In this document: in pieces, positions 1 through 56,203 of the stretch
How the letters are laid out: each line of letters opens with the position of its first letter
How positions within the stretch are numbered: the first letter of the stretch is position 1
Assembly: GCA_965240325.2 (NCBI GenBank)
Contig: OZ251243.1
Location: 1,054,001 to 1,118,000, forward strand
DNA length: 64,000 nt
Reading direction: 5' to 3'
Source: Rebecca billardiae RCC1528
Taxonomy: Eukaryota; Protista; Haptophyta
Notes under the pieces: generated by a model
Told to the model about the DNA's origin: nothing
What the model saw: the letters and a program-made list of their open reading frames with translations, nothing else
The model's database searches: none
Program-made: the position numbers and the translations under genes

Positions 1-347
1 GCCGTCGGGTCCCAGCTGGAAGCCTGCACGGCTTCCGCCGCGGCCGCGGAGGCGGCGCGCCCGTCGCCGCGCAGCAGAGCGGCAAGCAGCTGGTACCGGA
101 GGTGGTCTAGGCGCTCCGAAGCGAAGCGGCCGGGTGGTCGCTCCGCGTAGGTCGCGACGGACGCAAGCTGGACGAGCTCGCCGTGCTGCTCCTCGAGCGC
201 GCGGGAGAGCTGTATTTGCAAGACGCCGCTGCGCGCGGCTTCGCCCAACGCGGCATCGGCGCTTTCGTCGAGGCTGGCGAGCGAGCGGGCGAGCTCCTCG
301 AGGCTGAGGAGGTCCTCATGATGCCGTGCGTTCGGCGATGCGCGCAT
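1..347 (-). CDS. Partial gene running off the left edge; unknown product
   Basis: Minus frame open from about 600 to position 1. First ATG at 347 gives MRASPNARHHEDLLSLEELARSLASLDESADAALGEAARSGVLQIQLSRALEEQHGELVQL... with protein-like composition. Absent from the ORF track because its stop lies outside the window. Confidence 0.5.
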   Translation of the reverse strand, partial: MRASPNARHHEDLLSLEELARSLASLDESADAALGEAARSGVLQIQLSRALEEQHGELVQLASVATYAERPPGRFASERLDHLRYQLLAALLRGDGRAASAAAAEAVQASSWDPT

Positions 348-835
348 CGCTGCGCCCCCCGGCCGCACGACGACTGTGATGTCGGCGCGGGCCCGCTCGG
401 TGGCACTCAAGCTGAAAGCCGCCAAGCCGGCCGCGAGGCAGCCCGCCCGCCAGCTTGTCCACCGAAGCGACCGGACGGGCGAGAGCCGGTGCGAAGTTTC
501 TGCTGGATGAGAACTGAGAACCGCCGGCGAGTTCCGAAGTTGCGCCGGACTTTCGAGCGACGACGGCCGGCGGCGGCCGGCGGACTCCAGCCGTTGGCGT
601 TCACCGTGGTCGTCAGTTGATGCTGACGACTGCTGCTGACTGCCGACGCCGTCGCTGCGGTCATCATCCACGACTTTGCGTCGACAGACACAGTATTTGA
701 CAGTGGTAGTCCAGTAGCAGCCTGGTATATGTCACGACGGTGTCCTGCACACTCACTGGGACGGTGTGACGCCCGGTCGCGGGTCACTCAACAGGCGCGG
801 GTCGGATGGTCATGGTGCCAGCGAGCGTCATGGAT

Positions 836-10797: not shown

Positions 10798-13700
10798 CTA
10801 CTCCCTGCGGTAGGATTCGCCGCCACCGTCAGCGTCATCGTCGCCCTCCTCCTCGATCTCCGCGTCGATCTGGACCGTCGGGAGCCGCCCGCCGCCGGGC
10901 GGCGCGATCAAAGTGTCCGGCCCACCGGCCGGCGGCGCGCCCGTGAGCGGATCGGAGGGCGCCGCGCCGCGGCCAAAGCTGCGCGTGCACGAGCGGCCGA
11001 ACCGCCCGCTGTCGGCGCCGTCCGCGCCGCCGCCGCCGCCCGGCGCGCCGCGCTGATGCTCCGAGCGGCTGCTCACCGAGCGCTCCGAGGGCCAGCGCCC
11101 GATGGCCGGCGGCGCAATCTCGGGCACGGGGCGCGCGAGCGCCTGCGCGTACGAATCGTGCGTGCCGTACCCGAGGTCGTGCACGACGTGGCGCAGCACG
11201 GCGTGGAAGCGCGTCGGCGCGAAGAGCGCGTATCGGAGCGTGTCGATCGAGTACATCGTCGAGTCGATCACGGCGCAGATCTGCGTCACGTCCGCGTCTG
11301 TCAGGTCGCCGCCCTGCGCGAGCGTGCGCACGCGGTTGCGCTTGGTCTCGTTCGCCGCGCGCGCGGTGAGCAGGTTGAGCTGGAGCGTCACCACCGACCA
11401 GTTGCGCAGCCGGTGGTCGTGCAGCTCCTCCTTGGCGCGCGCGAGCACCGGCGCGACCGCCTCCTCCACAACCGCCGCCTTCCGGCTGTCGCCGGCGCAC
11501 GCGTGTGCAAGCTCGGCGTGCGCGTGCACAAAGCCGGCGAGCGCCTCGGTCACCTCGTACGTGCGCTGGAAGAGCGCGTGCCGCCACGCGACCTCGCCCA
11601 CCAGCGGCAGCCCCTGCACCGTGCGCGCCCAGCGCGGCTCGAGCAGCGGCAGCTCGTACAGCAGCACGTCCAGCTCCAGCTCGAACGCCCGGCCCGCCTC
11701 GGCGGCGGGGTGCTCTGCCAAATACTCCTCGCCGCTCGAGAGCGCCTCCACGAGCACGGCGAGCGAGGCCCCGTCGAGCTGCTTGTGTTCGTACGCCTCG
11801 AAGTAGAGCCGGCGGAGGACGGCAAAGAGCTGCGTGACGATCTCGTCGCGCTTCTCCTCGAGCGAGCAGTCGGCGCTGGCGCGGCGCGGGCCGAGGGCGC
11901 CGCCCGCGCTGCGCGGGTCGGCGGCCGTCGCGCCGCCGGCTGCGCCGCCGCCAACCCGCCGCCGGCGCATGCCGCCGCCGCCGTTGGCGGCGTTGGCCTG
12001 GGCAGCCGCGCCGTCGTCGTGTCTGGGCGTGTCTGCGCCGCCCTCGCCGTCGACGCGGAGGCTGACCATCTCCGCCGCCGCGTCCGACTCTGCGCCCTTC
12101 CCGCCGAGCGCGCCGCCCGTCATCCGATCCGTCGGCGCGCCCGCCTCGGCCGCCGCCCCGGGGAGCGCCAGCGCCGCCGCCGGCTGCGCGCCGGCCGCAT
12201 GCGCGCCGCTCGCGCCGTGCTGGTGAGGCTCCGCCTGTGCGAGTGACGCAGAGTCTGCCGCCGCCGCGCACGCGCCGCCGGTGAAGCTCGAGCTGTCCCC
12301 CTCCGCGCGCAGAGGCGCGATCTCGATCGCCTCGCGGCCGTCGCCGCAGCGCTCTGCGCCCTGCGCGGCACTCGCCCCCGCGGCCGCGGCCGCGCCCAGA
12401 ATCGCTCCCATGGCGGGCATCGAGGCGCAGGAGCGGATGCCGGACGCGGGGCCGGCGAGGGTGGCGCGCGGCGACGCGCCGGGCGATTTGAGCCGCAGCG
12501 AGCCCGCGCGCGGGCGGAACGCGGCCGCCTCGGCGCGCCACGCCGCGCGCGGGTTGGCCGCGTGCCGATCGCGCATCCGCGGCGCGCTCGGCGGCGCGCC
12601 CGGCGCGCGACCACCTGGGCTTGGCCCACCGCTGGTGCCGCCGCCCGGACCGCCGCCGCCTACGGGGAGCGACCCGGTCGAGAGAGAGCGCAGGCGGAGG
12701 TCGTACGCCGATGCCGCCACGGGCTCGGTCTCGACGCGCAGCCGCGAGGCGCCGCCGCCACCGCCGGCGGCGGCGGCGTCGGCGGCGGCGGCGCACGGCG
12801 CGTCCACGGCAGCCGCCGCAACCGGCTGCGGCGCTGCGCCCGACGCGCCGCCCGCGCCGAGCCACGAGCCGCGCCGCCCCGGCCGGTGCGAGCGCGGGCG
12901 CGCGAGGCGCGCGAGCGGGCTCATCGGCGAGGGCGCCGGCGGCGCCGGCTCCTCCGCCGCGCCCGACGCGCGCACGAAGCCGCTGCTCCCCCCGGCCGTG
13001 TGATCCTGATGGGGCGTGGTGTTCGGATCGCGAGAGTCCAGGGCCTCCAGCCAAGCGAGCACGCGCGCCGCGGGGCCCTCCGGCCGCGCGCTGTCGGCGA
13101 CGATGGCCTCGCGCGTGGGCGCGGTGGTGACGATGCGGCGCACCACCTCCTGCCCGAAGATGTCGATCCGCGTCGACGCCGGGATCTTCAGCCGGTTGTC
13201 GTCCTGCACGAACAGTCCGGTGAAGTCCGGCACCAGCAGCTGCACGACCTCCCAGTCCGCCTGTGCAAACAGCCAGTGCGCGTCGAGCGCCTCGCGGATG
13301 CTCGCCATCGCCTCGGTCTCGAGCTTGGCCACGACGCCGCGGACGAGGACGTCGCGGTACCGGTTGGCCGGGTACAGCTTGAGCCGGTCGTACAGCGCGG
13401 ACGTCGTCGTCCCGTTGATCAGCATCGTCAGCGCGACCGTGCCCGCGACGTGGTAGTGCACGCGCTCGCGGTCGGCGGCAGACACCGCGTCGTCGTGCAC
13501 GACTAGCAGGGAGAGCGAGAGACCGACGGCGCCGCGCAGCCCGGCGAAGATGATGATGGCCGACTCCTTGAGCGTGAGCGAGTAGCCCAGCCGCGAGAGG
13601 ATCGGGTACAGCAGACCCACCGTCAGCGCGCGCACGGCGTGCAGCAGCACGTACAGCGGCAGCGCGTGCCACCACGCGACCGTCGACGCCGGGCCGGCGA

Positions 13701-14772
13701 GCGCCGACCACGCGGCGATGCCCGCGACAAAGAAGATGATGGTCTCGGTGAAGTGCGCGAGCATCGGCATGACCGACTCGGCGACGGCCGTCGCGTGCGG
13801 CGAGAACGCGTACTTGCCGCGCCGCGCCATCAGCAGCCCGAACGTGACCAGCGCCAGCACCCCGCTCACGCCCGCGACCAGCTCGGCGATCCCGAAGCAC
13901 GCGTACACGGACAGCAGTAAAATACCCACCTCGACGCGGAAGTCGTTCTCGACGAAGCGGAGCCAGGTGACCACGGCGTAGAAGCAGGCGACGCCGAGCG
14001 CCGCGCCGCCCACGCACAGCCGCGCGAACACGAGCGCGCCCGAGCCGAACGAGTGCGACTCGCCGCCGAGCGCGTCCTGCCGGATGTTGTGCATCCACAC
14101 GGAGAACATCACCATCGCAGAGCCGTCGTTGAGCAGAGACTCGCCGTCGATCACGTCGGAGAGCTTCTCGGGCGCGCCGAGCGCGTGCAGCGTCGAGACC
14201 ACCGCCACCGGGTCCGTCGCCGTCACGATCGAGCCGAGCATCAGCGAGACGTTCCAGTCCCACGGCGCGCCGTCCTCGCCGTACCCGCTCGAGTACCGGA
14301 GGACGACGCCGACGATGAAGAGCTGGATGAGCACGCCGGGGAAGGCGAGGAGGAAGGCGCTCGCGCCGACGCGGCGGAACACGTGGTAGTTCATGTTCGA
14401 CGCCGACTCGTAGATCAGCGGCGGCAGCAGCACGAGCAGGATCACGTGCGGGTCAATGAACTGCGCAGAGTCGAGCGCGTCCGCGAGCGGGTCGGCCTCC
14501 CTGCGTACCGGCTGGTGGCGGCCGTGCGCGGCGTCGTCGATCACGGAGGCGAGCGCGCCCGTGAGGAACACCGAGAGCGTGTACGGCGGCAGCTGCACGC
14601 GCGGCCAGCGCTGCCGCGCGAGCGGTAGCAGCTGCGTCTCGACGAACCGAAGGGTCGTGCCGACCAGCAGGCCGACGCACGCGAGCACGACGACGTGCGA
14701 GGTGGCGTGGTCGCCCGTCGACACGTCGGCCTCGACGGAGTGCTCGTCGGACTCGACGGGGTGCTCCACCAT
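10798..14772 (-). CDS. SOS1/NHX7-like (CPA1) Na+/H+ antiporter with long cytosolic tail
   Basis: Likely ATG 14772. IDPHVILLVLLPPLIYES, LLAFPGV, ATDPVAVV, IDGESLLNDG, SGVLALV, GLRGAVGLSL, TMLINGTT; SOS1-like helical tail (LAGFVHAH). Confidence 0.92.
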   Translation of the reverse strand: MVEHPVESDEHSVEADVSTGDHATSHVVVLACVGLLVGTTLRFVETQLLPLARQRWPRVQLPPYTLSVFLTGALASVIDDAAHGRHQPVRREADPLADALDSAQFIDPHVILLVLLPPLIYESASNMNYHVFRRVGASAFLLAFPGVLIQLFIVGVVLRYSSGYGEDGAPWDWNVSLMLGSIVTATDPVAVVSTLHALGAPEKLSDVIDGESLLNDGSAMVMFSVWMHNIRQDALGGESHSFGSGALVFARLCVGGAALGVACFYAVVTWLRFVENDFRVEVGILLLSVYACFGIAELVAGVSGVLALVTFGLLMARRGKYAFSPHATAVAESVMPMLAHFTETIIFFVAGIAAWSALAGPASTVAWWHALPLYVLLHAVRALTVGLLYPILSRLGYSLTLKESAIIIFAGLRGAVGLSLSLLVVHDDAVSAADRERVHYHVAGTVALTMLINGTTTSALYDRLKLYPANRYRDVLVRGVVAKLETEAMASIREALDAHWLFAQADWEVVQLLVPDFTGLFVQDDNRLKIPASTRIDIFGQEVVRRIVTTAPTREAIVADSARPEGPAARVLAWLEALDSRDPNTTPHQDHTAGGSSGFVRASGAAEEPAPPAPSPMSPLARLARPRSHRPGRRGSWLGAGGASGAAPQPVAAAAVDAPCAAAADAAAAGGGGGASRLRVETEPVAASAYDLRLRSLSTGSLPVGGGGPGGGTSGGPSPGGRAPGAPPSAPRMRDRHAANPRAAWRAEAAAFRPRAGSLRLKSPGASPRATLAGPASGIRSCASMPAMGAILGAAAAAGASAAQGAERCGDGREAIEIAPLRAEGDSSSFTGGACAAAADSASLAQAEPHQHGASGAHAAGAQPAAALALPGAAAEAGAPTDRMTGGALGGKGAESDAAAEMVSLRVDGEGGADTPRHDDGAAAQANAANGGGGMRRRRVGGGAAGGATAADPRSAGGALGPRRASADCSLEEKRDEIVTQLFAVLRRLYFEAYEHKQLDGASLAVLVEALSSGEEYLAEHPAAEAGRAFELELDVLLYELPLLEPRWARTVQGLPLVGEVAWRHALFQRTYEVTEALAGFVHAHAELAHACAGDSRKAAVVEEAVAPVLARAKEELHDHRLRNWSVVTLQLNLLTARAANETKRNRVRTLAQGGDLTDADVTQICAVIDSTMYSIDTLRYALFAPTRFHAVLRHVVHDLGYGTHDSYAQALARPVPEIAPPAIGRWPSERSVSSRSEHQRGAPGGGGGADGADSGRFGRSCTRSFGRGAAPSDPLTGAPPAGGPDTLIAPPGGGRLPTVQIDAEIEEEGDDDADGGGESYRRE

Positions 14773-15643
14773 CGGCCTCGGCGCGCGGAGCCGCGGCGGG
14801 GCGCCGGCCCAGCTGCCGCCCGGGCGGAGGCTCGAGGCGCCGCCGTGCAATGGGACCGCGATGCGGCGGCCCGACCCACAGGAGGGGGCGCCGAACTTTC
14901 CGCTTTTCACAAAGCCCGTTCCGGCCGCGAGCTCCACAGCTCGCCAGCAGGCGGTGGCAACCCCGGCCGGGGCCGTGACGTCACCGCATGACCGATAGCG
15001 TGCGGCCCGGAACAACCGGCCGGGCGATGGCGGCAGTGCCTCCGCAGTGAACGCCGCCGCCGACGAGGCTGCAAACGGAAGACGACGGGTACCGGGCGCA
15101 TGCTTTCGTGACGACAGCTTTCGTCGGCGTCGCAGGGATGGCCGTAGTCGGATGAGCCCGCTGCTCAAGGAGATGGGCTGCGTCCGAGGCGCGCCGTGTG
15201 CCGCTGTGAGTACTGAGTGTGACTCACCGCGCGGCGGCCCGCGCTGGCGCCCGCCTGGCCGCAGGTGCCACCGCTCCGGCCCTCGGTTCGGACGGCCTGG
15301 ACTGCGGCTGGACGGCTTACACCGCCCTTGAGGCTTGGGCTTCTCATCATGGCATCATCGCCCAGTAAATCTGATCGTCCGAGCCGACTCTTCTTGACTA
15401 TCTCACAGACTCAATCACATCCGAGTTCATGTGAGACCCGCGGGGACTACGCCGCCGGCTACGCCTAACTACGCGCCGCACATCTCAGAACGCGGTTCGC
15501 AACTCGCCGGTACGGACTTATTGCCACTTAGGCAGCAGTGCCGGTAACGCCTACCCGCACTACCGATGTCGTCCGGGCCGCGGCGGCGGCGCCGCCGACC
15601 CACTGTCGGCTCGGCTCATCTGACAGCAGCACTGGCTGCGGCG

Positions 15644-18600
15644 CTAGTAGTGGATGGCGCGCATGCGCGGGTCTGCGCGCAGCCGCGCGTCCATCTCCTC
15701 GTACTTGAGCAGCGCCTGCTTCTCGTGCCGCTTCAGCCGGTCGTCGATGATCTGGATGCGGAACATGGCCGCCTGGCAGTAGCGCTCGTAGTCCTCCTCG
15801 GTCGCCTTGTCCTGGTGGTCGCGGTTGCGCGAGAACGTCGAGGTGCGCTTGGCGAGGTTGGCGTGCTCCTCGTCCAGCCTCGACTGGATGATCGTCGCGC
15901 GCTCGACGAGGCGGTCCTGCACGGAGGGTGGGCGCGGGGGTGGTGGCGGTGGTGGTGGTGTCAGGGCGGTTGCGCGGGGGCGGGCGCGCACGCATGGCGC
16001 CGAGCCCTGGCGATGCGGTGGGCGCGCCGCCTCGCACGGCCGCCCCGCGCCCGCGCCGCGCGCGCGCGCACCCGCAGGCTCTTGAGGCACGCCTCGCGCA
16101 CGCGCAGCGCCGTGTCCTTGTCCAGCGGCTCGCTCGACTTGGGGTTGGGCAGGAAGGGCGTCAGGTAGTCGTGCTGCGTCGCGGCGGCGGCGGCATCCTC
16201 CTTCCGGTCGGCGTCGAGGTACTGCCTGTTACGCGACGTGTCGTACACGGAGACGAGGAGCTGCCAGTCGGCCTCCTCCTCCTTGCGCTTGGCGAGGATG
16301 TCCTTCATCTGTCGCTCCTGCTCCCGGTACGCCTGCCCAGAGCAACGCCCGGAGGTGCGGTGCGGCGCGGTGGGGTGCGGCGCGGTGCGGCGCGGTGCGG
16401 TGGGGAGGCGCGTGTGGGTTGGCGAGAGGGGCACGCGCCGGGTGGCGTGTGCGGCGTGCGGCGGGCATGGCGCACTCGGCGTCGCGTGGCCGGCGGCACA
16501 CCCCGCCACAGCACCCGGTACGCCGCGCGCCACGCAGCCAACCCCCGCGCCCGGCTGCCCGGCCGGCCGCTCGCTCGCACTCGCGCACGCGCTCGCGCGC
16601 GCGCTCGGCGGCGCGGCGCGAACCTGCATGCAATCTCGCTCCGCCGAGATGAGCGCCTGAAACTCCTCGTGCAGCGCGGCGTTCTGCGGCTTCTTGGCGA
16701 ACGGGTCGACGAGCGTGAAGGTCGCCTGCCCCGTCTCCGTCGAGAACGTCCGCGTCGACGCGGTGATCCGCCCCTCGCCGTGGTGGAAGTAGAGCTGGAT
16801 GAACTGCGCGCGCAGCGCAAACACGCGCTTGGCCACGTCCGCCTCTGCCGGGATGGCCTCGTCGCGCGCGTATTTCTCCGTCATCTTGACGATGACGGGG
16901 TCGGCGTCGGACGCGTCGCGCGGCGCGCCGGCCGACGCCTCGTCGAACGTCACCGAGCGGTACACCAGCCGGTCGTCCCGCCCCACGTACCGCTCGATCG
17001 TCTTCACGCCGAACTCGTCCGTGCGCTCCAGCAGCCCGTCCAGCCGCGCGGCCGGGTAAAAGGTGAGTACGCGCAGCTTGCCCGGCGCGGACGCGTTGCC
17101 CGTGACGAGGCGGTGCTCCTTGAGGCCGAAGGGGCGGCCGGGGAGGAACTGCTCGACCACCTCGTTCGTCGTCACCCGCGTCACGCGCGAGACCAGCCGG
17201 TCCTTCCGGTGCTCGAACGTCTCGTGGATCTCAGACGCGTCCGTGCACGGCGCGTCGTCGTAGAGCGTGAGCCGTCGCACGAGCGCGTCTTTGCGCGCGT
17301 ACGGCGCCCAGGTGTGCAGGATGCCCTTCTTGAAGCGGACCTCCTTGGTGCGCCCGGGGCAGCGCGACTCGAACTCGGCGGGCGTGAGCGCGAGCCGGCG
17401 CACCCACGAGGGCGGCATGTCCAGCTCGTTGTCCGGGCCGACCGTGTCGGCGTGTGCGCCGTTGTCGCCGGCCGCGCCGCCGCCGCCGCCGCCGCCGCCC
17501 GCCGCCGCGCCCGCCGCCGCGCCCGCGCCGCCGCCGCCGCTCGCGGCCGCGGCGCTCGCCTTGGGCGTTGGCGGCGCCTGCTCGGCCGCGCCGCCGCCGG
17601 CCGCCGGCGACGGCGCCGCCGGCGACGCGGCCGGCTCGGCGCCGTCCGCGGCCGGCGCGCCGGGCGCACCGCCCTCCGCCGCCGAGTCGGCCGCGGCCGC
17701 GGCCACCGCGGCCTCGTCCTCCTCGTCGCCCTCATCCACGACCTCCTCCTCGCCCTCCTCGAGGGCGGCGAGCGCGTCGAGCGCGGAGGGCGCCGTCGAG
17801 TCGACGAGCACGTGCTCCCACTTGTCCGTGTCCTGCAGGTCCCACGAGATCTGCGGGCCGTGCACGTGCGTGCCCTGCATGTTCACCCACAAGTTGGCCG
17901 CGTTGAAGATCGCCTCGACGCCATAGTAGGGGACAGAGCCCTCGAGCTTGACGCACGCGCCCGTCGACGGCTCGAGGAAGAAGTGCTCGTCGAGCTGGCG
18001 CTTGCCGGCGAGGAGGAGGACCCACGCGTGGATCCGCCGGCCGCGCAGCTCGTCCATCTCCTCCTCGTCGTCCTCGTCCTCCGCGCCCGCGCTCGGGCTC
18101 GTCGGGCCGGCGGCGGGCGGCGGCGGCGGCGGGCCGTGGCCGTCGGCGGTGGGCGGGAGCGGCGGCGGCGCGGGCGTGACGCCGCCCGAGCGCTTCCTCG
18201 CCTCCTCCTCCGCGGCGGCCTCGGCCTCCTGCTCCTTGAGGAACTTGGACTCGAGCGGCGGGCGCCGCGGCAGCCGGTACTTGTTCTCCTGCCCGCCCTC
18301 CGCCTGCTGCCCGACCTCCGCGCCGCTGTCGGCGGAGACGGCCGCCTTGGTCTGGTTGCACTGCGTCGTCTTCTTATGCGCGTACCCGTACACGACGTAC
18401 GCGTCGTAGCCGACGCCGAGGAGGAGCGAGCAGAGCAGGATGGACACGTCGAAGCAGTCCCCCGCCTGCCACCGCAGCACCGCCGAGGGCGAGGGCATGT
18501 GCCGCGGCAGGTGCGTCGGCAACTCGAGCGGCTCATACGTGACGTAGTCTGCGACAAAGTGCGCGCACTTGTCGAAGTCGTACAGCAGCTTGTACGGCAG

Positions 18601-19987: not shown

Positions 19988-22900
19988 TCAGCCCTTGTTG
20001 TTGGGCGCGGCGCGGTCGGACGAGAGGATGCTGGCGACGAGCTCGTCGATCGACGTCTTGCTCTCGCCGCTCGTCTTCTTGCGCAGCGCCTTGGTGATCC
20101 CGCCCGAGACGCAGATGAACAGCGACTGGATCGTCGCCTGGAACGACCCCTGCGAGAACCACCCCTGCACCGCGAGGAAGATGAACAGGAACAAGAAGAC
20201 GAGCCACAGGATGAGCGCGAGCAGGGAGAGCGCGATCCGCGCCTCCGAGACGCCCATCGAGTCGGCGGCCTCGTCGATCATCTGCGCGACGAGGAAGTCC
20301 CAGCCGTCGTCGAACTCGCGCTGGTCGATCCGCCCGTCCCCCGACACGTCCATGTACGCGAACAGCTGCTCCTTGCGCGCGTCCGACAGCTGCAGGTCCA
20401 GCTTGGAGAACCGCTCGGAGAACTCCTCGAGAGAGAGGCGCGGGTCATCCATCTCGCGCGTGAGCAGACCAAACACGTCGGAGGGCAGCAGCCGCCCGCC
20501 GCCGCCCGCACCGCCGTCGACGGCCACCGCCTCGGCGACCGCGCCGGCGGCGGCCGCCGCGCCCAGCCCATCCGCGCCGCCGCCGCCGCCGCCGCCCGCA
20601 CCGGCCAGCGCCCCCGCCGCCGCCGGTGGCTTGAGCAGACTCACCTCCGCCTCATCGCCGAGGACAAGCGCCTTTGTTCCCAGGAGCTCGGCGCGCGTCA
20701 GCCCGATCTCGCGGAGCTGCGCCCCCTGCTTCTCCGCCTCGATCGCCGCGAGCGCGCGCCGGAGCGACGACTGCAGCCGCGTCTCGAACGCGGCGGACAG
20801 CCGCGAGCGGAGCGCGCTCGCCGCGGCCGAGAGCTCGCGCTTGGTGGAGATGACGACGACGATGCTGACCACGACGGCCGTGCCGGCGGGGAGCAGCCGG
20901 TCCGGGTCGACGATGGACGCGAGGATGCACTGCGCGCGCCGGGGGAGGAGGAGGGGTGCGGGGGCGGGGGCGCACCCGCCGCGCCGCCGCGAGCGCGCGC
21001 CGGGACTCCGCGTGAGGCCGCGGAGCGCAGCGCGCGCGCGGCCCAACACGAAGCAACCCAGTGCGCGCGCGCCCGCTCGGCGCTCGCGTCGCGCTGCTGA
21101 GTACTGCGAGTACTATGGGGGTACTGCGGTGAGTACTTACCCACGTGAGGTTGAGGGTGACGCGCAGCAGCAGCAGCAGCACGTGCAGGCACAGGAGCAC
21201 GGCGTACGCGCTGTCCAGCAGCCGCTTCGCGCGGATCATCCTCGGGCCGAGCGAGAGGTCCGCGTAGTGCAGACCCATGTGCAGCATCGTCGCGTAGACA
21301 AAAACGACCATCTCCACAATCTCGTAACGCACGCTCGGCAGGATCTGCGCCGACTCGCGGTCGAAGAGCGCGGTCCACCACATGCCGCGCATGTCGGTGT
21401 GGAAGGCGTACTGCCAGAGCAGCGGCTGGCGCGTGGCGGTCGTGCGCGAGAAGACCGCCTGCGCGTACACCGCGGTGCACAGCACCGCCATCGACGGCAG
21501 CACGAGCAGCCAGAAGTGCACGAGGACGGTCAGCGCCTCCGCGCCGAACCGGCCGAGCCCGACCGACGCCTCGTCCCTGGGGCCCTCGCTCAGCACGAGG
21601 CCGTGAACGGTGCGCGCGCGCGTCTCGATGCAGCGCACGCCGAGCTCGGCGAGGGCGTGCAGCACCTCGAGCTCCGTCGGCTCGCGCGCGCCCCTCGCCT
21701 CGCACCACAGCCGAAGCTCGGGCCCAAAGCTGCGCTCAGCGCCGGCGCCGCTGGCCGGACCACCCGCAGACTCGGCCGCGTCCGCGGGCACAAAGACGGT
21801 CGCCCCCGCGAGCTCGAGCCGCTCGGACACGAATTGCTTCACGTCCTCCTTGCCACTGAGGAAGTTGGCGGCGGCCTCGGACTCGCCCGCGTGGCTCCCG
21901 CCCGCGTCGGCGTGGCTGCCAGCCGGCCGCGCAAACGACGCGCTGCGCCGCGAAGGCGATGGCCGGCCCGCGGCCGCGTGCAGCTCGGCTGGCGCCGCCG
22001 CCGGCAGCGCCGCCGAGCCAGACTGCGCGCCTGCCGCGCCCTCGGCCGGCGGCACCGCCATCGCTGCCGCGGCCGCGGCCGTCGGCGTCAGCTGCCCTGT
22101 GCACACCGGCAGCGGGGTGCACGCTGACGCCGCGGCGGGCGCACGCTGCGCGTGCGCGGCGCCGCCGCCGGCGGCGGCGGCGGGCGGGTCGGCGTGCGGC
22201 GCGCGCGCGCCGCGCGCCGCCCGCGCCGTGCTGGGGCTGGCGGTCGCCTCCGAGCACGCGTCTTCAAACGCACCGCCGCAGCCGCTCCCGGCCGCGGCAT
22301 AGCCAGGCGGGGGCGCGGGCGGCAGCGGCGGCGCGCCGTCCCGCCACCTCAGCCCGCAGTACCGCTTGACCGGGTACACCGACACTCGGCATCCAAAGTC
22401 GGCGATCAGCGCGCGCTGCAGCGCGTCCCGTGACATCTCGATGTCGAGATCACGCTGGAAGCAGAAGGTCTCGAAGGCGTCGACGAGGTCGGCGAAGGGC
22501 GTAGTGGGGCGCAGCGACGCGGGCGCGCCCGCGGGCGCGCCCGCGCCGCCGGCGCCGCCGCCCGCGCCCCCGCCGCCGCCCGGCGCGAGCCCCGCGCGCC
22601 GGCGCGCGCCCTGCGCCGCCTTGGCCGCGGCGATGCCGTCGAGCTCGCACGCGTGACGCACGAACGCGCGGAGCGAGTGCGTGTGCCGCCGGCGCAGCGG
22701 CGCGACGAAGACGGCGGAGATGAAGACGAGCGGCACCGCGAAGACGTTGAAGCTCGGCACGTCCCCGGACATGTCCGCGCGGTCGGCGTACGCACTCACG
22801 CCGTCCGCCAGCTCCATCGCCAGCCCCTTGTTCTGCAGCACGCGCAGCCGCGAGCGCTGCGCCTTCCACACGCGCACCATCAGCGCGCGCGCGCCGAGGT

Positions 22901-24003
22901 AGAGCGCCCACTCCGCGCCGGCGGCGACGACGAGCGCGGAGAGCATGCTCATCAGCACGGCGATGTGCAGCACGGTCGACAGCGTGGTCGAGCCCAGCGC
23001 CGACTTGGCGGGCGTCTCCGCACCGAGCAGCTGGAAGTCGAACAGCTCATAGGAGGGGCCTAGCCCCAGCCTCGACCAGAACGCGCCGCCGCGCTCCTCC
23101 GAGCCCACCAAGAGCACCTGTCCGCGCGCGCGGCGCGTGTCCTTGCCGTCGGACTTGATCGCGCGGGAGAGGCCGGCGTGCACGGCCGCGAGCCGCGCGT
23201 CGTGGTCCGAGTACACCACCTCTGTGCACGCAGAGTCCGCGTCGAGCTGGTCCGCCAGCATGTACACGGCCGAGCACGCGGCGCGCACCACCTCGCCGCG
23301 CGTCAGGTTCTCATCGCAGTCCGCGTTGTGGAAGCGCACGCGGTAGCGCAGCAGCGTGGGCACGAGGGTGCCTGCGGCACGGCGCGGCGCAGGGTTAGGG
23401 TTCGGGTGAGGGCCGCAGGGGCACGCGCAGAGCGGGCGGGGATCAGTCAGCAGGCGCGCATGCATGCGGCACCGCGCATGCATGCGGCACCGCGCATGCA
23501 TGCGCGCGTGTGCGCGCGTGGCATCCGCCCGGTGGACTCGCCGCCTCCGCGCCCGCCGCGGCATGGCCGCAGCACGGCGCCGCGCCACGCGACGGATCGC
23601 CGCCGCGCGCCGCGCCGCGCCCGAGCGCGCGCGCACCCAGCGAGAGGTGCGCCAACGTCGCGGGGTCGAGGATGTGGAAGACAGGCGCCGTGGCGTACAC
23701 CCACAGCGAGCGCGGTACGCCTGGCGCGGCGGGCACGTCAAAGACGATGTACGCGTGCTCCGTCGAGCCAAGGTCGCCGTACCTCGGCCCCACCTCCTTC
23801 TGCAGCGCCATCGCGTCCGCGTGCAGCATCCGGATGCCGCCATACTTGTTGGCGGGCGAGTACCAGTGCGCGGACTCGGCCGGCCAGAGCGGCGGCCACG
23901 CCGTCGACGCGCCGCGCCCGGAGGCGGCGCGCTCCCACGTGGAGTTGCGCGCGCGGAGGGAGATGTGCACCTGCCCGCCCGTCGCGTCGACCGCGGTCCA
24001 CGT

Positions 24004-24034
<31 letters not shown>

Positions 24035-25635
24035 GGCACGGGGCACACGTGCGAGCGAGAGGGCTTGCACGCGGCGGGCGACGGCGCGGCGGCCGCGCCG
24101 ACGGCGCCGCGCGAGTGACGGTCACGCGCCGCGGGCGACGCGCCGCCGTCGGGGCCGTCGAGCTCGGCGGGCGGCGGCTGCGTCACCGTCAGCCGCTGCC
24201 GGCACTGCGGCACGAACCCCGTGTAGTTGTACGCCATCACCTGCCCGAGGAATGCCGAGTTTGAGAGTACGCCCGCGCGGCCTCCGAACGACGCGTCGGT
24301 TGAGCCGGTGGTAGTCGGGAAGAGCTTCCACGCGACCGGGTCGCAGTAGGTGCCGTACGGGCAGGAGGTGGCGCCGCAGCAGTACGGGATGGCGAGCAGC
24401 GCGGAGAGGAACTCCGAGCGGTCGACGAACCGGTCCCCGTTCGGGTCGAAGAACGCGCTCGCCCCCTCCAGATAGAACTGGCTACGGCACAACTGCCAAG
24501 GGTCGGCGGACGGCGCGATATACGGGTCGACCACGGCAGGCGGCGGCGGCGGGCGCGGCTCCGGGGCGCTCCCCGGCGGCGCGGGCGGGCGCGCGGCCGG
24601 CGGCGAGGGCGGCGGCAGCGGCACGCTCGGGATCTCCGCCGCGACGCACAGGTAGTTCATCGGCTGCCGGATGTTGAGGAGAAGCTCGGCGCCGCCGATC
24701 GCGCTCGGCGCGAGCGAGTCCGGCAGCACGGCGTCGATGGCGATCGTCCCGCCGGAGGAGCGCACGTCGACGTCGGCGGCGCCGTCGATGTCGCACTGGT
24801 CGCAGCGCAGCGAGCCGCCCGCGAGCGTGACGTACAGCGCCTTCCGGATCGTCACCGCGCGCAGCGCCGCGTCGAGCGTCGGGCCCGTCGGTGCCCAGTA
24901 CTGCCCGCCCGGCCCGCGCACGCGCAGCGTGCCGAGCGTCACGTTGGTCACGCGCAGCTGCACCCACGGGTTGGGGTCGTTGGAGAGCTGGTTCACGTGC
25001 AGCTCGAACGGCACGACGCCCTCGGGCACGCGCACCGCGAGCAGGCACGACTCGCTGCACTGCATGAACGGCTGCTTGCGGCAGTCGGCCGTCGAGCTCG
25101 CGCGCGCGTAGTGCACGAGGTTGTGCTCGTTGAACGACCAGCTGACGCGCGTGGTGGAGATGATGCCGCGGAGCTGTAGCTGCGGCGGCTCGTCCGCGCC
25201 GACGCTGAGCACGCGCACGTCGCACCCGTACACGTCGAGCACGAGCGCGCGGCGCGGGTCAAAGTCCTTCTCGATCTGAATCACCTTGAGCGGCAGGTGC
25301 ACGAGCCACAGCACCGCGCCGAGCGAGCAAACGGCGAGCAGCCACCACACGAGGCGCGCGCACCGTCGGTGCCGCAGCGCGCGCTCGGAGAGCCCGTACA
25401 CCCGGGGCACGCGCGCCGCCGGCACCGGCGTTCCGCCGAGCGCGCTCTTCACGCGCGCGAGGATGGGCTCCGCATTTGCGATGGAGAGCGTCCGCACGAG
25501 CGCGCGCGGCGCCCACGGCTGCTGCTGGCCGCGGTGGGCGCCCTCGTCCTGCAGCTCGGAGTAGCCGACGACCGGCGGCGCCGCGAGGCCCCACGAGCTC
25601 GGCCCGGCCTTCTCGACGTCGCGCCGCCGATCCAT
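19988..25635 (-). CDS. ~1,720-aa multi-pass membrane protein with EF-hand loops and two winged-helix-like repeats; function unknown, 3 exons
   Basis: Exons 25635-23637, 23371-21141, 20929-19988 (GT..AG, 5172 nt, in frame). N-terminal TM (LVWWLLAVCSLGAVLWLV), Cys-containing region, EF loops DPNGDRFVDRSEF and DVSGDGRIDQREF, several further TM helices. Confidence 0.8.
23390..23503. repeat. Intronic telomere-like hexamers plus 20-bp tandem repeat
   Basis: cagggttagggttcgggtgaggg at ~23390-23412; gcgcatgcatgcggcacc.. repeated about 2.5 times at ~23456-23503. Confidence 0.7.
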
Positions 25636-25826
25636 CGCGATGGCCGTGTTGCCGTGCTCGCCTGCCACTGGCCGTCGGTCCGCGACCAACTTTGGCACGT
25701 CTTTGCCCTTTCAAAGGTCTTGAATGGATAGATCTTGACAAGACAGTCTTGACTCGGCTTTGCCCGTGCGCTTCCGGTCGGCCACGATGGAGTTCGAGTG
25801 ACGGACGGAGGGGGCACAGCCCAGTC

Positions 25827-50910: not shown

Positions 50911-52202
50911 TCAGTACACGACCGCCAGCTCGGTGCGCACCTGCCAGCGCAGGTCCGCGCGCGCCTTGCTCGTCGGCGGCACGTACGTGTTGGGCACGCG
51001 CGGCCGCGAGAACTTGGTCTGGTGCGGCACGTGGTCGCGCCGCAGCCGCTCGCGCGTCTCCCAGACCACTCGGTCGCGCCGCTTCTCTGTCGGGACCTGG
51101 TACTGCGCGGCGCGGGCGACGCGGTCGTGGTGCACGCGGTAGCTCTCGGTGGTCGCGTGCGTCGTCGTGATCGGCGCGTGCCGCGGCGTCGTCGACTGCC
51201 GGCTGCGCAGGAAGGCGTTGTTGCTCCTGCGCGCGCGCGCCCAGAGCAGGGCGGGTTTGGAGGCGCGCGGTGCGGGGCGGCCGCGTGATGGACGATTGCG
51301 AGTAGGGGCGGGTTCGAGCTTGGCGGGCCCGGGCCCACGTGGTGCTCATACTGCGCGGGCGCGTGCTCCCCGTGCGCTCTCGGAGGCTAGGGCCGAGCCC
51401 AGTAGAATCCGGGTGCGTCCCTGGGTTGCGCGTGCGCTGAAGGCGCACAGGGCATGGCGGCACACGCGCGCGGCGCGCGGGATGCGCGCACCACTCGCGC
51501 ATCTGCTGCTGGCGCATGCTGACCGGGTCGGACTTGACGCGGCCGGGGGTCGACTTCTGAGGCGCGATGAAGCCCATCGTCGAGCCCGAAGGCGCGAGCC
51601 GGCTCGCGCTCGGCGGCGTGCGCGGAGCTGAGCGCGCGCTGCGCGCCGTGCCGGGGCGCGGCGCCGAGCTCGGCGCGGCTGGTGAGGAGGCCGGCGGGCG
51701 GCCGTCGGAGTGGACGCCCCGGGCAGAGCGCAGGGGGACTTCGGATGCCGTCGCCGGGCGCGCGCGCGCGGTCTGAGGCCGGTCGGGCGTGCGCCTGGGC
51801 GTGTGCGGCTTGCGTGCCCTGCCGCCCCGATGCGCAGCGCGGCGCGCAATGGATTGACACCGCGCGGCGTGAGCGCGCGCGCGCGCGGCGTGCGCGTGAG
51901 GCGACGCGCGGCGCATGCGCGCACCTGCCAGACAAATGCGCCTCGTCCAGCCCACCCGCGTAGTCACCCGGCCGGGCGGACGCGCCTGCGGGCACGTGCG
52001 GCACAAAGTCAACGCCGACCGCGGTCGGGAATGCGAGCGGCTCGGCGCCGCCGGTCTGGGGTGGGCCCTCGGCGGCGATGGTGAGGTCGGAGAGGATCGC
52101 GCGGAGCACATCGTCTGAGAAGGACGAGGCGTCGTACCCCAGCTCGCTCTGCAGCTGCTGGCGCACGCGCTCGATGTCGACGTCGTCGTCCTCCGCGCTC
52201 AT
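50911..52202 (-). CDS. HYLS1: HYLS1-like centriole/basal-body protein, 3 exons
   Basis: Exons 52202-51925, 51818-51492, 51226-50911 give KSDPVSMRQQQMREWSNNAFL..YQVPTEKRRDRVVWETRERL..PNTYVPPTSKARADLRWQVRTELA (HYLS1 C-terminal pattern); N-terminal VRQQLQSELGY. Confidence 0.85.
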
Positions 52203-52413
52203 CGCGGTGCTTGTCGCTTGAACTGCCCCCCTCGCGCCCTTTTCGCAAGGGGCGGCCGCCGTCCGTTGCAAGGCCTTGCTGACGAGTCCGGGCGCGGAGG
52301 CCGGACACGGTGCGCATTTTTGCGCAGAGCGCCGCACAGGACCAACGGCCTTCGTGACGCGGGCACAGCGCCATCGCAGGGCGAGCGCGGGTCGCGGCCG
52401 CGCCATCGGCGTG

Positions 52414-55400: not shown

Positions 55401-56172
55401 CGCCCGCGCGGCGCCGGGCGGCGGCGGCGGCGGCGCCGCCGCCGCGCCCTCCGCGCGCCACGCCGCGCCGAGCGGCGCCGCTGCCATGCTCGCCGCGTCG
55501 AACGGCCGGCTCGTCGATTCGCGCGTGCGCGCGGGCGGCGCACACGCGGGTGTGACGCTGGTCGTCACGTCCAAGTCTCAGCTCGCAGAATGGCGGCAGC
55601 AGCTCGGGGCTCACCTGCGGCCGGGCGCGCTGCGCGTGGTGGAGCACGGCAGCGCGGCCGGGTGGGGCGGCGGCGCGGCCGGGCCGAGCGCCGCCGCGCC
55701 GCTCGGCCCGGCGCGTGGCTCGGCGCGCGGCGGCGGCGGCGGCGGCGCGCTCGCGCTCGCGTCCGCATCCGCCGACGGCGCCGATCGCGCGGGCCGCGCG
55801 TTCGGCGGCGCGCACGTCGTGCTGTGCACGTACGGGGCGCTCGCCGCCGAGCACGCCGCCGGGCATCGCGGCGGCGGCGGCGGCGCGGGCGCGGCGGCGG
55901 GCGGCGCGGCGGCGGGCCCGCTGCTCGGCTCGAGCTGGCACCGACTCATCCTTGACGAAGCACACCTGCTGGCGGAGCCCATCGCCTCCGACGCGGCGCG
56001 CGCGGCGTGCGCGCTGCGCGCGCCGCGCCGATGGCTCCTCACCGCGTCGCCGCTGGCGCGCGGGCTCGGCGGCGCGCACGCGCTGCTGCGACTGCTGCAG
56101 GTGTGGCCGTACCGGTATCCGGCGTGGTGGGGGCTCAGCGTGGCGGCGCCGCTCGCGCGCGCGCGCGCCACC

Positions 56173-56203
<31 letters not shown>

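What the first reader, a model, noticed from the sequence alone, without database searches (positions are those of the whole stretch)
19988..25635. Large membrane protein combining EF-hand loops with two tandem RFX/D5-type winged-helix-like domains: candidate membrane-tethered, Ca2+-linked nucleic-acid-binding receptor
Seen: a three-exon, ~1,720-aa frame with an N-terminal TM, a Cys-containing putative ectodomain with an EF loop (DPNGDRFVDRSEF, ~24410-24448), further TM helices and a second EF loop (DVSGDGRIDQREF, ~20312-20350). Between TM blocks lie two mutually similar units: SLRAFVRHACELD..TPFADLVDAFETFCFQRDL..LQRALIADFG..VKRYCGLRWR (~22680-22341) and DVKQFVSERLEL..FGPELRLWCEARG..VLHALAELG..TVHGLVL (~21851-21590). 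Known: the pattern F..e.ce...ly..y..(f/w)C...g/l...f...l...g...y.Gi/l is that of the RFX DNA-binding domain and the C-terminal winged helix of D5/P4 primase-helicases. Inference: such a fold inside a polytopic EF-hand membrane protein is an architecture I do not recognise. It could be a one-component sensor, a proteolytically released transcription factor, or a chromatin/viral-DNA tether.
Basis: partly seen in the sequence, partly recalled or inferred. Interest (0 to 1): 0.78.

Follow-up and report, generated by a model that had tools for sequence, protein, structure and literature searches.

The report
Algal membrane protein with winged-helix pair
This is a real three-exon gene for a large multi-pass membrane protein of an unstudied family seen so far in green algae and marine samples. 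Its probably cytosolic loop holds two copies of a winged-helix fold, and the closest known relatives of that fold are the DNA-binding domains of RFX factors and phage P4/D5 primase-helicases, an arrangement not described before.

Summary
The minus strand at 19988-25635 carries one three-exon gene of 1,723 codons. Third-codon-position GC of 0.9-1.0 switches frame exactly at two GT..AG introns. The three exons are colinear with single proteins elsewhere, including one intronless 4,014-nt ORF.

The exhaustive protein search found 39 relatives, all unnamed or called "EF-hand domain-containing". Named sources are Mantoniella, Tetraselmis, a Symbiodinium assembly and marine metagenomes.

Sequence-level membership in RFX or Pox_D5 is not shown. 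Positive-inside counts put the units and the EF-hand pair in the cytosol.

Nucleic-acid binding is untested. Release as a transcription factor is unlikely, because membrane segments flank the units on both sides.

The scan flagged a paralogue on another piece of this genome (s1-336796).

Verdict: a new architecture built from known folds. Interest is moderate to high.

The parts
19988..25635 (-). Whole gene: 3 exons, 1,723 codons plus stop
   Evidence: ORFs and splice sites were read.
23637..25635 (-). Exon 1: cytosolic N-tail, TM1 and most of the ectodomain
   Evidence: It aligns to P0001 residues 75-612.
23372..23636 (-). Intron 1 (265 nt, GT..AG, phase 1). It holds an 18-nt x3 tandem repeat at about 23455-23503.
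   Evidence: The frame switch is seen.
21141..23371 (-). Exon 2: end of the ectodomain, TM2, NVF helix, the two winged-helix units and three TM helices
   Evidence: This exon was the query of the exhaustive search.
20930..21140 (-). Intron 2 (211 nt, GTAAGT..GCAG, phase 0)
19988..20929 (-). Exon 3: TM helix, coiled coil, EF-hand pair, two C-terminal hydrophobic helices and the stop codon
25288..25356 (-). TM1 (RLVWWLLAVCSLGAVLWLVHLPL), preceded by RHRRCAR
   Evidence: Hydropathy. Coordinates.
24586..25290 (-). Membrane-proximal ectodomain module, possibly a beta-helix of the DUF4097 type (a lead only)
   Evidence: The language-model look-alikes are all DUF4097 clusters at score 0.86, below the level the tool calls reliable.
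24226..24528 (-). Cys-rich ectodomain module with an EF-like loop (24409-24447)
   Evidence: Pfam EF-hand_1 gives E 0.052, below threshold. The loop ligand positions 1, 3, 5, 9 and 12 and the CCG..CP....C pattern are conserved in 17 relatives.
22995..24006 (-). Best-conserved ectodomain module next to TM2, spanning intron 1. Its fold is unknown.
   Evidence: It shows 53% identity to P0001 over 135 residues. P0019 is 78% identical over exon 2 residues 1-41. The Atlas gave no lead.
22896..22976 (-). TM2
   Evidence: It is followed by a K/R-rich stretch.
22686..22751 (-). Short hydrophobic helix (FNVFAVPLVFISAVFVAPLRRR; NPF..PL..PLRR in most relatives). It is probably interfacial rather than membrane-spanning.
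   Evidence: The motif is conserved in about 40 sequences. It is a 17-residue helix with pLDDT about 90. Mean hydropathy over 24 relatives is 0.68, against 1.9-2.3 for clear TMs.
22332..22679 (-). Winged-helix unit 1: helix 1 (22638-22676), a 45-residue Gly/Ala-rich insertion, then the core (22335-22502)
   Evidence: Alignment A1. hhalign against unit 2. AF2 gives pLDDT above 90. Basic residues on helix 3 and the wing are conserved.
21858..22331 (-). Low-complexity Ala/Gly/Pro linker between the units (about 160 residues), modelled as disordered
   Evidence: pLDDT is below 50. Relatives have linkers of variable length here. GC3 stays high but discriminates the frame only weakly, so an in-frame intron is not excluded.
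21579..21857 (-). Winged-helix unit 2
   Evidence: Alignment A2. hhalign against unit 1. AF2 gives pLDDT 85-98.
21141..21539 (-). First three helices of a four-helix TM bundle (21450-21539, 21255-21344, 21141-21221)
20840..20929 (-). Fourth helix of the TM bundle
20657..20839 (-). Long cytosolic helix (coiled-coil-like) after the bundle
   Evidence: In the relative's model it continues the last bundle helix as helix 384-448. Coordinates.
20279..20491 (-). EF-hand pair. The first loop is degenerate. The second loop is canonical (20312-20350).
20075..20242 (-). Two C-terminal hydrophobic helices (20159-20242 is strong; 20075-20146 is weaker) before an RKK tail

Best explanation
The locus is one three-exon gene. 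It encodes a member of a conserved, unnamed family of large multi-pass membrane proteins found in green algae (Mantoniella, Tetraselmis) and in marine metagenomes.

Shown:
- The family architecture is: short N-tail, TM1, an ectodomain of about 680 residues, TM2, a short hydrophobic helix, two tandem homologous winged-helix units, a four-helix TM bundle, a long helix, an EF-hand pair, and two more hydrophobic helices.
- The ectodomain is Cys-rich and has a conserved EF-like loop. Some relatives also carry a thrombospondin type 1 repeat.
- The winged-helix units belong structurally to the subclass of the RFX DNA-binding domain and the P4/D5 primase-helicase origin-binding or tail domain.

Inferred:
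- The winged-helix pair and the EF-hand pair both face the cytosol. The pair is tied to the membrane at both ends, so it lies against the inner leaflet.

Most likely mechanism (inference): it is a surface receptor-like or adhesion-like protein. Its cytosolic face combines a Ca2+-sensing EF pair with a rigid, membrane-proximal winged-helix platform.
- Unit 1 keeps a conserved basic helix 3 and wing, and would dock an anionic partner. That partner could be nucleic acid, acidic lipid or a protein.
- Unit 2 looks mainly structural.

The units probably derive from a mobile-element or viral D5/P4-type domain, or share an origin with RFX. Sequence evidence for that is lacking.
For: Gene model:
- Splice sites and phases were read.
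- Exon junctions are contiguous in P0001, P0009, P0016, P0040 and P0041.
- P0009 is one uninterrupted 4,014-nt ORF on an 832-kb contig.

Family:
- The search found 39 hits, nine of them 1,337-1,662 aa long with the same domain order.
- The EF-hand pair, and TSP1 in the ectodomain of four of six relatives scanned, are above or near Pfam cut-offs.

Repeats: hhalign of unit 1 against unit 2 gives 96.6%, E 6e-10.

Fold:
- Two independent AF2 models (the window's own segment, and relative P0009) give each unit H-b-b-H-H-hairpin at pLDDT about 90.
- In BFVD the best hits are phage helicase/primases, at probability 0.98 and 0.94.
- In the ESM Atlas, 9 of 10 rows are Pox_D5/DUF5906/D5_N primase-helicase clusters.
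- The literature treats RFX DBD, P4 OBD and the pRN1/ASFV tails as one winged-helix subclass (PMC2777425, PMC10516667).

Topology:
- K+R counts over 20-30 relatives fit a model with the units, the post-bundle flank (3.0 K+R against 0.9 D+E), the EF pair and the C-tail inside.
- The helix before unit 1 is short and weakly hydrophobic.

Unit 1: mean net charge is +3.4, with R/K conserved at 67-93% on helix 3 and the wing.
Against: - No significant Foldseek hit in the PDB (best E 1.2 and 0.018).
- The aligned ranges (for example 31..393 and 47..241) span both units. I cannot say which unit, or what combination of the two, is being matched.
- No unit sequence hits Pfam RFX_DNA_binding or Pox_D5. 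hhalign against a 10-sequence P4-type profile gives only E 0.0067, probability 5.7%, for unit 2, and nothing for unit 1.
- The alignments behind the models are shallow (32-36 sequences).
- Topology rests on charge counts only.
- There is no expression data: no RNA run was listed.
- The window's own units are acidic (net -1 and -5).
- The function is inferred from architecture alone.
Confidence: 0.55

Rival explanations
1. The winged-helix pair is a true nucleic-acid-binding module. The protein would then tether or sense DNA or RNA at a membrane under Ca2+ control. Possible forms are an inner-nuclear-membrane chromatin tether like LEM2/MAN1, or a sensor or anchor for incoming viral DNA.
For: - Both nearest structural relatives bind double-stranded DNA through helix 3 and the wing (PMC2777425).
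- Unit 1 keeps basic residues at exactly those elements in 67-93% of relatives.
- A DNA-binding winged helix in a two-TM inner-nuclear-membrane protein is a known precedent (PMC4719305).
- The Atlas and BFVD neighbours are all replication proteins of phages and giant viruses.
Against: - The ectodomains carry TSP1 repeats and disulfide-type Cys patterns typical of surface proteins, not of the perinuclear lumen.
- The pair is pinned to the membrane at both ends.
- Unit 2, and the window's own units, are not basic.
- Many winged helices bind proteins. Cullin WHB, Slx4 CCD and Cdt1 are also in the hit list.
- No binding test was possible.
Confidence: 0.28
2. The protein is primarily an ion channel or transporter, similar to TRPML, polycystin or two-pore channels. 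The EF hands and winged helices would then be cytosolic gating domains.
For: - The large ectodomain sits between the first two TMs, as in TRPML and PKD2. This comparison rests on my own knowledge.
- Foldseek lists TRPML1/3 and AtTPC1 at E 0.02-0.06.
- An EF-hand pair next to a TM bundle is typical of Ca2+-regulated channels.
Against: - Those alignments have probability 0.2-0.3, TM-score 0.10-0.15 and rmsd 19-30 Å, so they are not real matches.
- No pore-loop or selectivity motif was seen.
- VIA matches for the bundle are generic helical hairpins such as Chs1, NINJ2 and HtrII.
- No Pfam channel family hits.
Confidence: 0.12
3. The winged-helix resemblance is an artefact: AlphaFold over-confidence on a shallow alignment, or a generic small alpha/beta arrangement. 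On this reading the units are a lineage-specific domain unrelated to RFX or P4.
For: - There is no sequence-level link.
- Foldseek PDB E-values are not significant.
Against: - Two models built from different first sequences give the same topology.
- Four libraries searched by three programs converge on the same narrow subclass.
- RFX1-DBD is covered 76 of 76 residues at 2.0 Å.
- Nearly all of the top 50 rows are winged helices.
Confidence: 0.1
4. The gene model is wrong: the three ORF pieces are separate genes, or a pseudogene.
For: No RNA run could be listed. The long low-complexity stretches could hide errors.
Against: - Canonical splice sites in the correct phases.
- The GC3 signal runs through all three exons.
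- The junctions are contiguous in five relatives, including transcript-derived proteins and one intronless ORF.
Confidence: 0.03

Closest known systems
RFX DNA-binding domain (RFX1 1dp7, RFX5 8zjr; Pfam PF02257)
   Different: No hit to the Pfam RFX profile in 53 unit sequences. Sequence identity in the structural alignments is 8-12%. The units sit inside a polytopic membrane protein, not in a soluble transcription factor with dimerisation domains. RFX factors are reported missing from Chlamydomonas and rare outside Amorphea (PMC10530576).
Origin-binding or tail winged helix of P4/D5-type primase-helicases (phage P4 alpha 1ka8; ASFV C962R 8wvz; Pfam PF03288 Pox_D5)
   Different: That hhalign match is not significant (probability 5.7%), and unit 1 gives nothing. 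There is no Pfam PF03288 hit. The protein has no helicase or primase domain. The units are duplicated in tandem and embedded between membrane segments.
LEM2/MAN1/Src1 MSC domain (a winged helix in inner-nuclear-membrane proteins)
   Same: A winged helix on the cytosolic or nucleoplasmic side of a membrane protein, close to TM segments. It is a precedent for membrane-tethered DNA binding (PMC4719305).
   Different: No LEM/HeH domain and no MSC hit in Pfam. MAN1 is not among the top 50 structural matches. This family has about eight TM helices and a large Cys-rich, TSP1-bearing ectodomain.
EF-hand-regulated membrane proteins (for example PKD2 or two-pore channels)
   Same: A canonical EF-hand pair in a cytosolic loop next to a TM bundle.
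   Different: No credible structural or sequence match of the TM bundle to any channel.

Membership tests
Winged-helix fold (structural class) | H1-b1-H2-H3-b2-wing-b3 order of secondary structure | tested here: met
   DSSP of two AF2 models shows it. In the window model, unit 1 is H30-38, E39-41/E87-89, H90-103, H112-123, E126-140, and unit 2 is analogous. The P0009 model gives the same.
Winged-helix fold (structural class) | Superposes on solved winged-helix domains | tested here: met
   Nearly all of the top 50 of 48,161 chains are winged helices: RFX, P4 OBD, MCM8, cullin WHB, ORC/Cdc6, MukF and Cdt1. The aligned ranges span both units, so assignment to a single unit remains open.
RFX_DNA_binding (Pfam PF02257) | Sequence match to the family profile | tested here: not met
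   No PF02257 hit at E<=10 in the window pieces or in 27 + 26 unit sequences. The PDB profile search did not find RFX chains.
RFX_DNA_binding (Pfam PF02257) | Structure superposes on the RFX DBD over its full length | tested here: met
   [not shown]
RFX_DNA_binding (Pfam PF02257) | X-box DNA binding through the wing and helix 3 | not testable with these tools
   The only related observation is conserved basic residues on helix 3 and the wing of unit 1.
Pox_D5 / P4-family primase C-terminal domain (Pfam PF03288) | Sequence match to the family profile | tested here: not met
   No PF03288 hit. P4 alpha itself carries PF03288 over this domain.
Pox_D5 / P4-family primase C-terminal domain (Pfam PF03288) | Profile-profile similarity to P4-type origin-binding domains | tested here: inconclusive
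   hhalign against a 10-sequence profile (A5) gives E 0.0067 and probability 5.7% over 54 columns in the expected register for unit 2, and nothing for unit 1. The profile is shallow and drawn only from Enterobacterales.
Pox_D5 / P4-family primase C-terminal domain (Pfam PF03288) | Lies C-terminal to an SF3 helicase and primase | tested here: not met
   No helicase or primase domain in the window protein or in six relatives.
EF-hand pair (Pfam PF13499) | Score above the gathering threshold | tested here: not met
   The window's exon 3 scores 18.1 bits against a cut-off of 30. Relatives P0009, P0016, P0020, P0021 and P0031 score 35.6-42.9 bits, so the family meets the threshold and the window copy is degenerate in its first loop.
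EF-hand pair (Pfam PF13499) | Canonical 12-residue loop (D-x-[DNS]-x-[DNS]-G-x-[ILV]-[DSTN]-x-x-E) | tested here: met
   Loop 2, DVSGDGRIDQRE, fits at every position, read directly. The ectodomain loop DPNGDRFVDRSE fits except that Gly6 is Arg.
Membrane-tethered transcription factors released by proteolysis (SREBP/ATF6/Notch type) | DNA-binding domain at a free cytosolic end, so that one cleavage event releases it | tested here: not met
   The pair lies between TM2 plus the NVF helix and the four-helix bundle. Two cuts would be needed to release it.
LEM2/MAN1 group (HeH/LEM + MSC) | N-terminal LEM/HeH motif and C-terminal MSC domain separated by two TMs | tested here: not met
   No such Pfam hits, and the TM count and domain order differ.

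The most novel reading that the evidence does not exclude
The tandem units are functional nucleic-acid-binding domains captured from a D5/P4-type primase-helicase of a giant virus or mobile element, or they share an ancestor with the RFX DBD. They now sit on the cytosolic face of a Ca2+-responsive surface protein. That would make a eukaryotic membrane receptor that directly tethers or senses DNA or RNA, for example incoming viral genomes. It would also point to a non-opisthokont relative of the RFX domain.
Probability: 0.2. Interest if true: 0.85.

Novelty: new variant of a known kind. Interest (0 to 1): 0.62.

Why it matters
RFX-type and P4/D5-type winged helices are known as DNA-binding modules of soluble transcription and replication proteins. 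Finding a duplicated pair of this subclass built into a conserved multi-pass membrane protein family, next to EF hands, is an architecture with no description that I could find.

It matters in three ways:
- It defines a new, completely unannotated protein family with several unnamed domains: an ectodomain module, a TM bundle and the winged-helix repeat.
- It gives a concrete, testable candidate for membrane-proximal nucleic-acid or lipid recognition in marine algae that live with giant viruses.
- It bears on the unresolved origin of the RFX domain, which is reported as largely confined to Amorphea (PMC10530576).

If the units prove to be protein- or lipid-docking modules, the finding remains a useful case of a DNA-binding fold put to another use.

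Tried and rejected
1. The word-index protein search with the exon 2 ORF found nothing. The exhaustive search was needed.
2. BLASTP of the window's two units against each other found nothing.
3. Pfam and NCBIfam scans of the window pieces gave only sub-threshold EF-hand hits.
4. PDB sequence and profile searches with exon 2, A1 and A2 gave only noise.
5. Per-member Pfam scans of the units at E<=10 gave only faint Cdc6_C hits, in 2 of 27 and 1 of 26 members.
6. Foldseek against the PDB was not significant for either model. I rejected the TRPML/TPC rows as non-matches (rmsd 19-30 Å).
7. I tried to build a P4-type comparison profile.
   - The phage collection held only 4 records.
   - My last word-index search listed only sequences at least 92% identical to P4 alpha, so that search was poorly spent.
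   - Ten plasmid and phage sequences gave profile A5. Its comparison with the units was not significant.
8. RNA evidence: no run was listed.
9. The Atlas look-alike search for the juxtamembrane ectodomain module gave no usable hit.
All searches were made exon by exon, by reference. In one search a script concatenated the exons only to count codons and to scan hydropathy. It printed only the hydrophobic segments and saved only the length.
11. I considered a signal-released transcription factor and an inner-nuclear-membrane tether. I rated both unlikely, for the reasons given in the full report.

Full report
**1. The gene.**

The window is about 72% G+C throughout, so long ORFs appear in every frame. 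The coding frame therefore had to be shown, not assumed.

Three minus-strand ORFs (23443-25698, 20652-24125 and 19988-21049) are linked by two canonical introns:
- The first donor is CTG G|GTGCGC at 23637/23636. Its acceptor is ..CCGCAG|GC at 23372/23371, in phase 1, giving G+GC = Gly.
- The second donor is TGG|GTAAGT at 21141/21140. Its acceptor is ..GCGCAG|TGC at 20930/20929, in phase 0.

G+C at third codon positions is 0.9-1.0 in the model frame in nearly every 150-nt bin. It jumps from frame 0 to frame 2 to frame 1 exactly at the two introns, and is flat outside 19988-25650.

The junctions are confirmed by relatives:
- Exon 1 ends at P0001 residue 612 and exon 2 begins at 615.
- Exon 2 and exon 3 are likewise adjacent in P0001. 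All three exons align in order to P0009, P0016, P0040 and P0041.
- P0009 is encoded by one uninterrupted 4,014-nt ORF on an 832-kb metagenomic contig.
- Several relatives come from transcriptomes.

No RNA run could be listed for the locus, so the splice sites have no direct read support.

The neighbouring genes are an Na+/H+ exchanger and a DRC7 (flagellar dynein regulatory complex) homologue. This is ordinary nuclear context in a flagellate.

**2. A conserved, unnamed family.**

The word-index search was blank. The exhaustive phmmer search with exon 2 gave 39 hits, 15 of them below 1e-10. Nine are 1,337-1,662 residues long.

Reading five of them shows the same order of parts as in the window protein.

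Sources name them 'hypothetical protein', 'unnamed protein product' or 'EF-hand domain-containing protein'. Identified organisms are Mantoniella antarctica, Tetraselmis sp. GSL018 and a Symbiodinium sp. KB8 assembly. The rest are marine metagenomes and metatranscriptomes.

Pfam sees only two things in relatives: the C-terminal EF-hand pair, above threshold, and a thrombospondin type 1 repeat in the ectodomain of four of six relatives scanned.

In the window protein itself both EF signals are below threshold:
- The second loop of the C-terminal pair is canonical (DVSGDGRIDQRE) and the first is degenerate.
- The ectodomain loop DPNGDRFVDRSE keeps ligand positions 1, 3, 5, 9 and 12. In 17 relatives it is followed by a conserved CCG..CP....C pattern, so it looks like a disulfide-braced extracellular Ca2+ site.
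- A language-model search hints that residues 116-350 form a DUF4097-like beta-helix (score 0.86, a lead only).

The scan's notes record a second gene of the same description on another piece of this genome (s1-336796). I could not inspect it.

**3. The two units.**

Pairwise, the window's two units are not detectably similar. Across the family they are.

A conserved motif, NPF..PL........PLRR..x.S...F(V/I)...C.V, ends in helix 1 of unit 1. A variable insertion follows (45 residues of Gly/Ala-rich sequence in the window), and then the unit 1 core.

Separate alignments of 27 unit-1 and 26 unit-2 segments (A1, A2) match each other by hhalign at 96.6% probability, E 6e-10, over 86 columns. The units are therefore tandem homologous repeats.

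**4. Fold.**

AlphaFold2 on the window's own segment 21570-22763, with a 36-sequence alignment, gives pLDDT above 90 on both units and below 50 on the Gly/Ala insertions. Each unit reads helix-strand-(insert)-strand-helix-helix-beta hairpin.

A second model, of the compact relative P0009:700-1337, gives the same for both units.

Foldseek against the PDB was not significant. Its weak list does hold ORC1-WH, MukE/F, RFX-DBD and FoxH1.

Exhaustive VIA-align comparison with 48,161 chains gave, for the window model:

Two further libraries agree:
- In the viral library the best hits are phage helicase/primases (probability 0.98 and 0.94; E 0.19-0.4). Many D5-like entries lie lower in the list.
- In the ESM Atlas, nine of ten rows are Pox_D5/DUF5906/D5_N primase-helicase clusters.

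Published work already groups RFX-DBD, the P4 alpha origin-binding domain and the pRN1 ORF904 and ASFV C962R tails as one winged-helix subclass (PMC2777425 and PMC10516667).

Caveats:
- Foldseek E-values are weak.
- The alignments behind the models are shallow.
- The reported model ranges (for example 31..393 and 47..241) run from helix 1 of unit 1 to the hairpin of unit 2. I cannot tell whether one unit, or a swapped combination of the two, is being superposed.

**5. Membership against resemblance.**

No unit sequence hits Pfam RFX_DNA_binding or Pox_D5 at E<=10. The only faint signal is Cdc6_C in three sequences. PDB profile searches are blank.

I built a P4-type profile from P4 alpha and nine plasmid homologues. 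Unit 2 aligns to it in the structurally expected register but without significance (E 0.0067, probability 5.7%). Unit 1 does not align.

So the units work like, and look like, RFX/P4-type winged helices. They cannot be filed as members of either sequence family.

**6. Topology and mechanism.**

Hydropathy gives TM1, TM2, the short NVF/NPF helix, four bundle helices, and two C-terminal helices.

The ectodomain must be extracytosolic, given its TSP1 repeats and conserved Cys pairs.

Counting K+R and D+E around each hydrophobic segment in 16-31 relatives gives this picture:
- The NPF helix is only about 12-14 hydrophobic residues between two prolines. Its mean hydropathy is 0.68, against 1.9-2.3 for clear TMs, and it has basic residues on its C-terminal side. 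It is probably interfacial.
- The flank after the bundle is basic (3.0 K+R against 0.9 D+E).
- The loop between the last two helices is acidic and short.
- The tail begins with RRR or RKK.

The consistent model places the winged-helix pair, the coiled coil, the EF pair and the C-tail in the cytosol. This is inference, not proof.

The pair is then tied to the membrane at both ends. Helix 1 of unit 1 starts two residues after the NPF helix. The hairpin of unit 2 ends about ten residues before the next TM.

Unit 1 has a mean net charge of +3.4 across the family, with Arg/Lys conserved at 67-93% on helix 3 and the wing. Unit 2 is near neutral. The window's own copies are -1 and -5.

From this I propose, as the most likely mechanism, a surface receptor-like or adhesion-like protein. 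Its cytosolic side joins a Ca2+-sensing EF pair to a rigid, membrane-apposed winged-helix platform that docks an anionic partner.

My rough estimates for that partner:
- Nucleic acid is a live possibility, about 0.3.
- Acidic lipid or a protein is at least as likely.

Release as a soluble transcription factor would need two cuts, so I rate it unlikely. A channel reading has no structural support.

**7. Novelty.**

I found no paper describing an RFX/D5-type winged helix in a polytopic membrane protein.

The nearest precedent for a membrane-tethered winged helix is the MSC domain of LEM2/MAN1 (PMC4719305). It differs in every other respect.

RFX factors themselves are reported missing from Chlamydomonas and rare outside Amorphea (PMC10530576).

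The folds are known. The family and its architecture are new.

Searches were made exon by exon, by reference.
- A script concatenated the exons only to count codons and scan hydropathy.

Noticed in passing
[not shown]
   Followed up: no
window about 23455-23503 (inside intron 1): An 18-nt unit (GCATGCATGCGCGGTGCC-like) is repeated three times in tandem. In the exon 1 frame it reads HACAVPHACAVPHACAP, which could mislead an ORF-based annotation.
   Followed up: no
window 10801-15168 (-) and 15964-18522 (-): The neighbouring genes are an Na+/H+ exchanger (Pfam E 3e-51) and a dynein regulatory complex subunit 7 homologue (MORN_DRC7, E 1e-64). The source is therefore a flagellated eukaryote.
   Followed up: partly
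window 52001-58000: G+C rises to 0.79-0.84 over 6 kb, well above the window mean of about 0.72.
   Followed up: no
relatives P0016, P0020, P0021, P0031 (ectodomain): These relatives carry a thrombospondin type 1 repeat and extra Cys-rich sequence in the ectodomain. The window protein, P0001 and P0009 lack them.
   Followed up: partly
P0001 residues about 1390-1609; P0013 C-terminus: The C-terminal parts of these metagenomic predictions read like out-of-frame, Arg/Ala/Pro-rich translation. The likely cause is an unrecognised intron at the position of the window's intron 2 or later. They were trimmed before alignment.
   Followed up: partly
The genome therefore probably has at least two paralogues.
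   Followed up: no
window 21141/20929 (intron 2): Intron 2 falls between the third and fourth helices of the TM bundle, at a point where the model of relative P0009 has only a one-residue break between two long helices.
   Followed up: no
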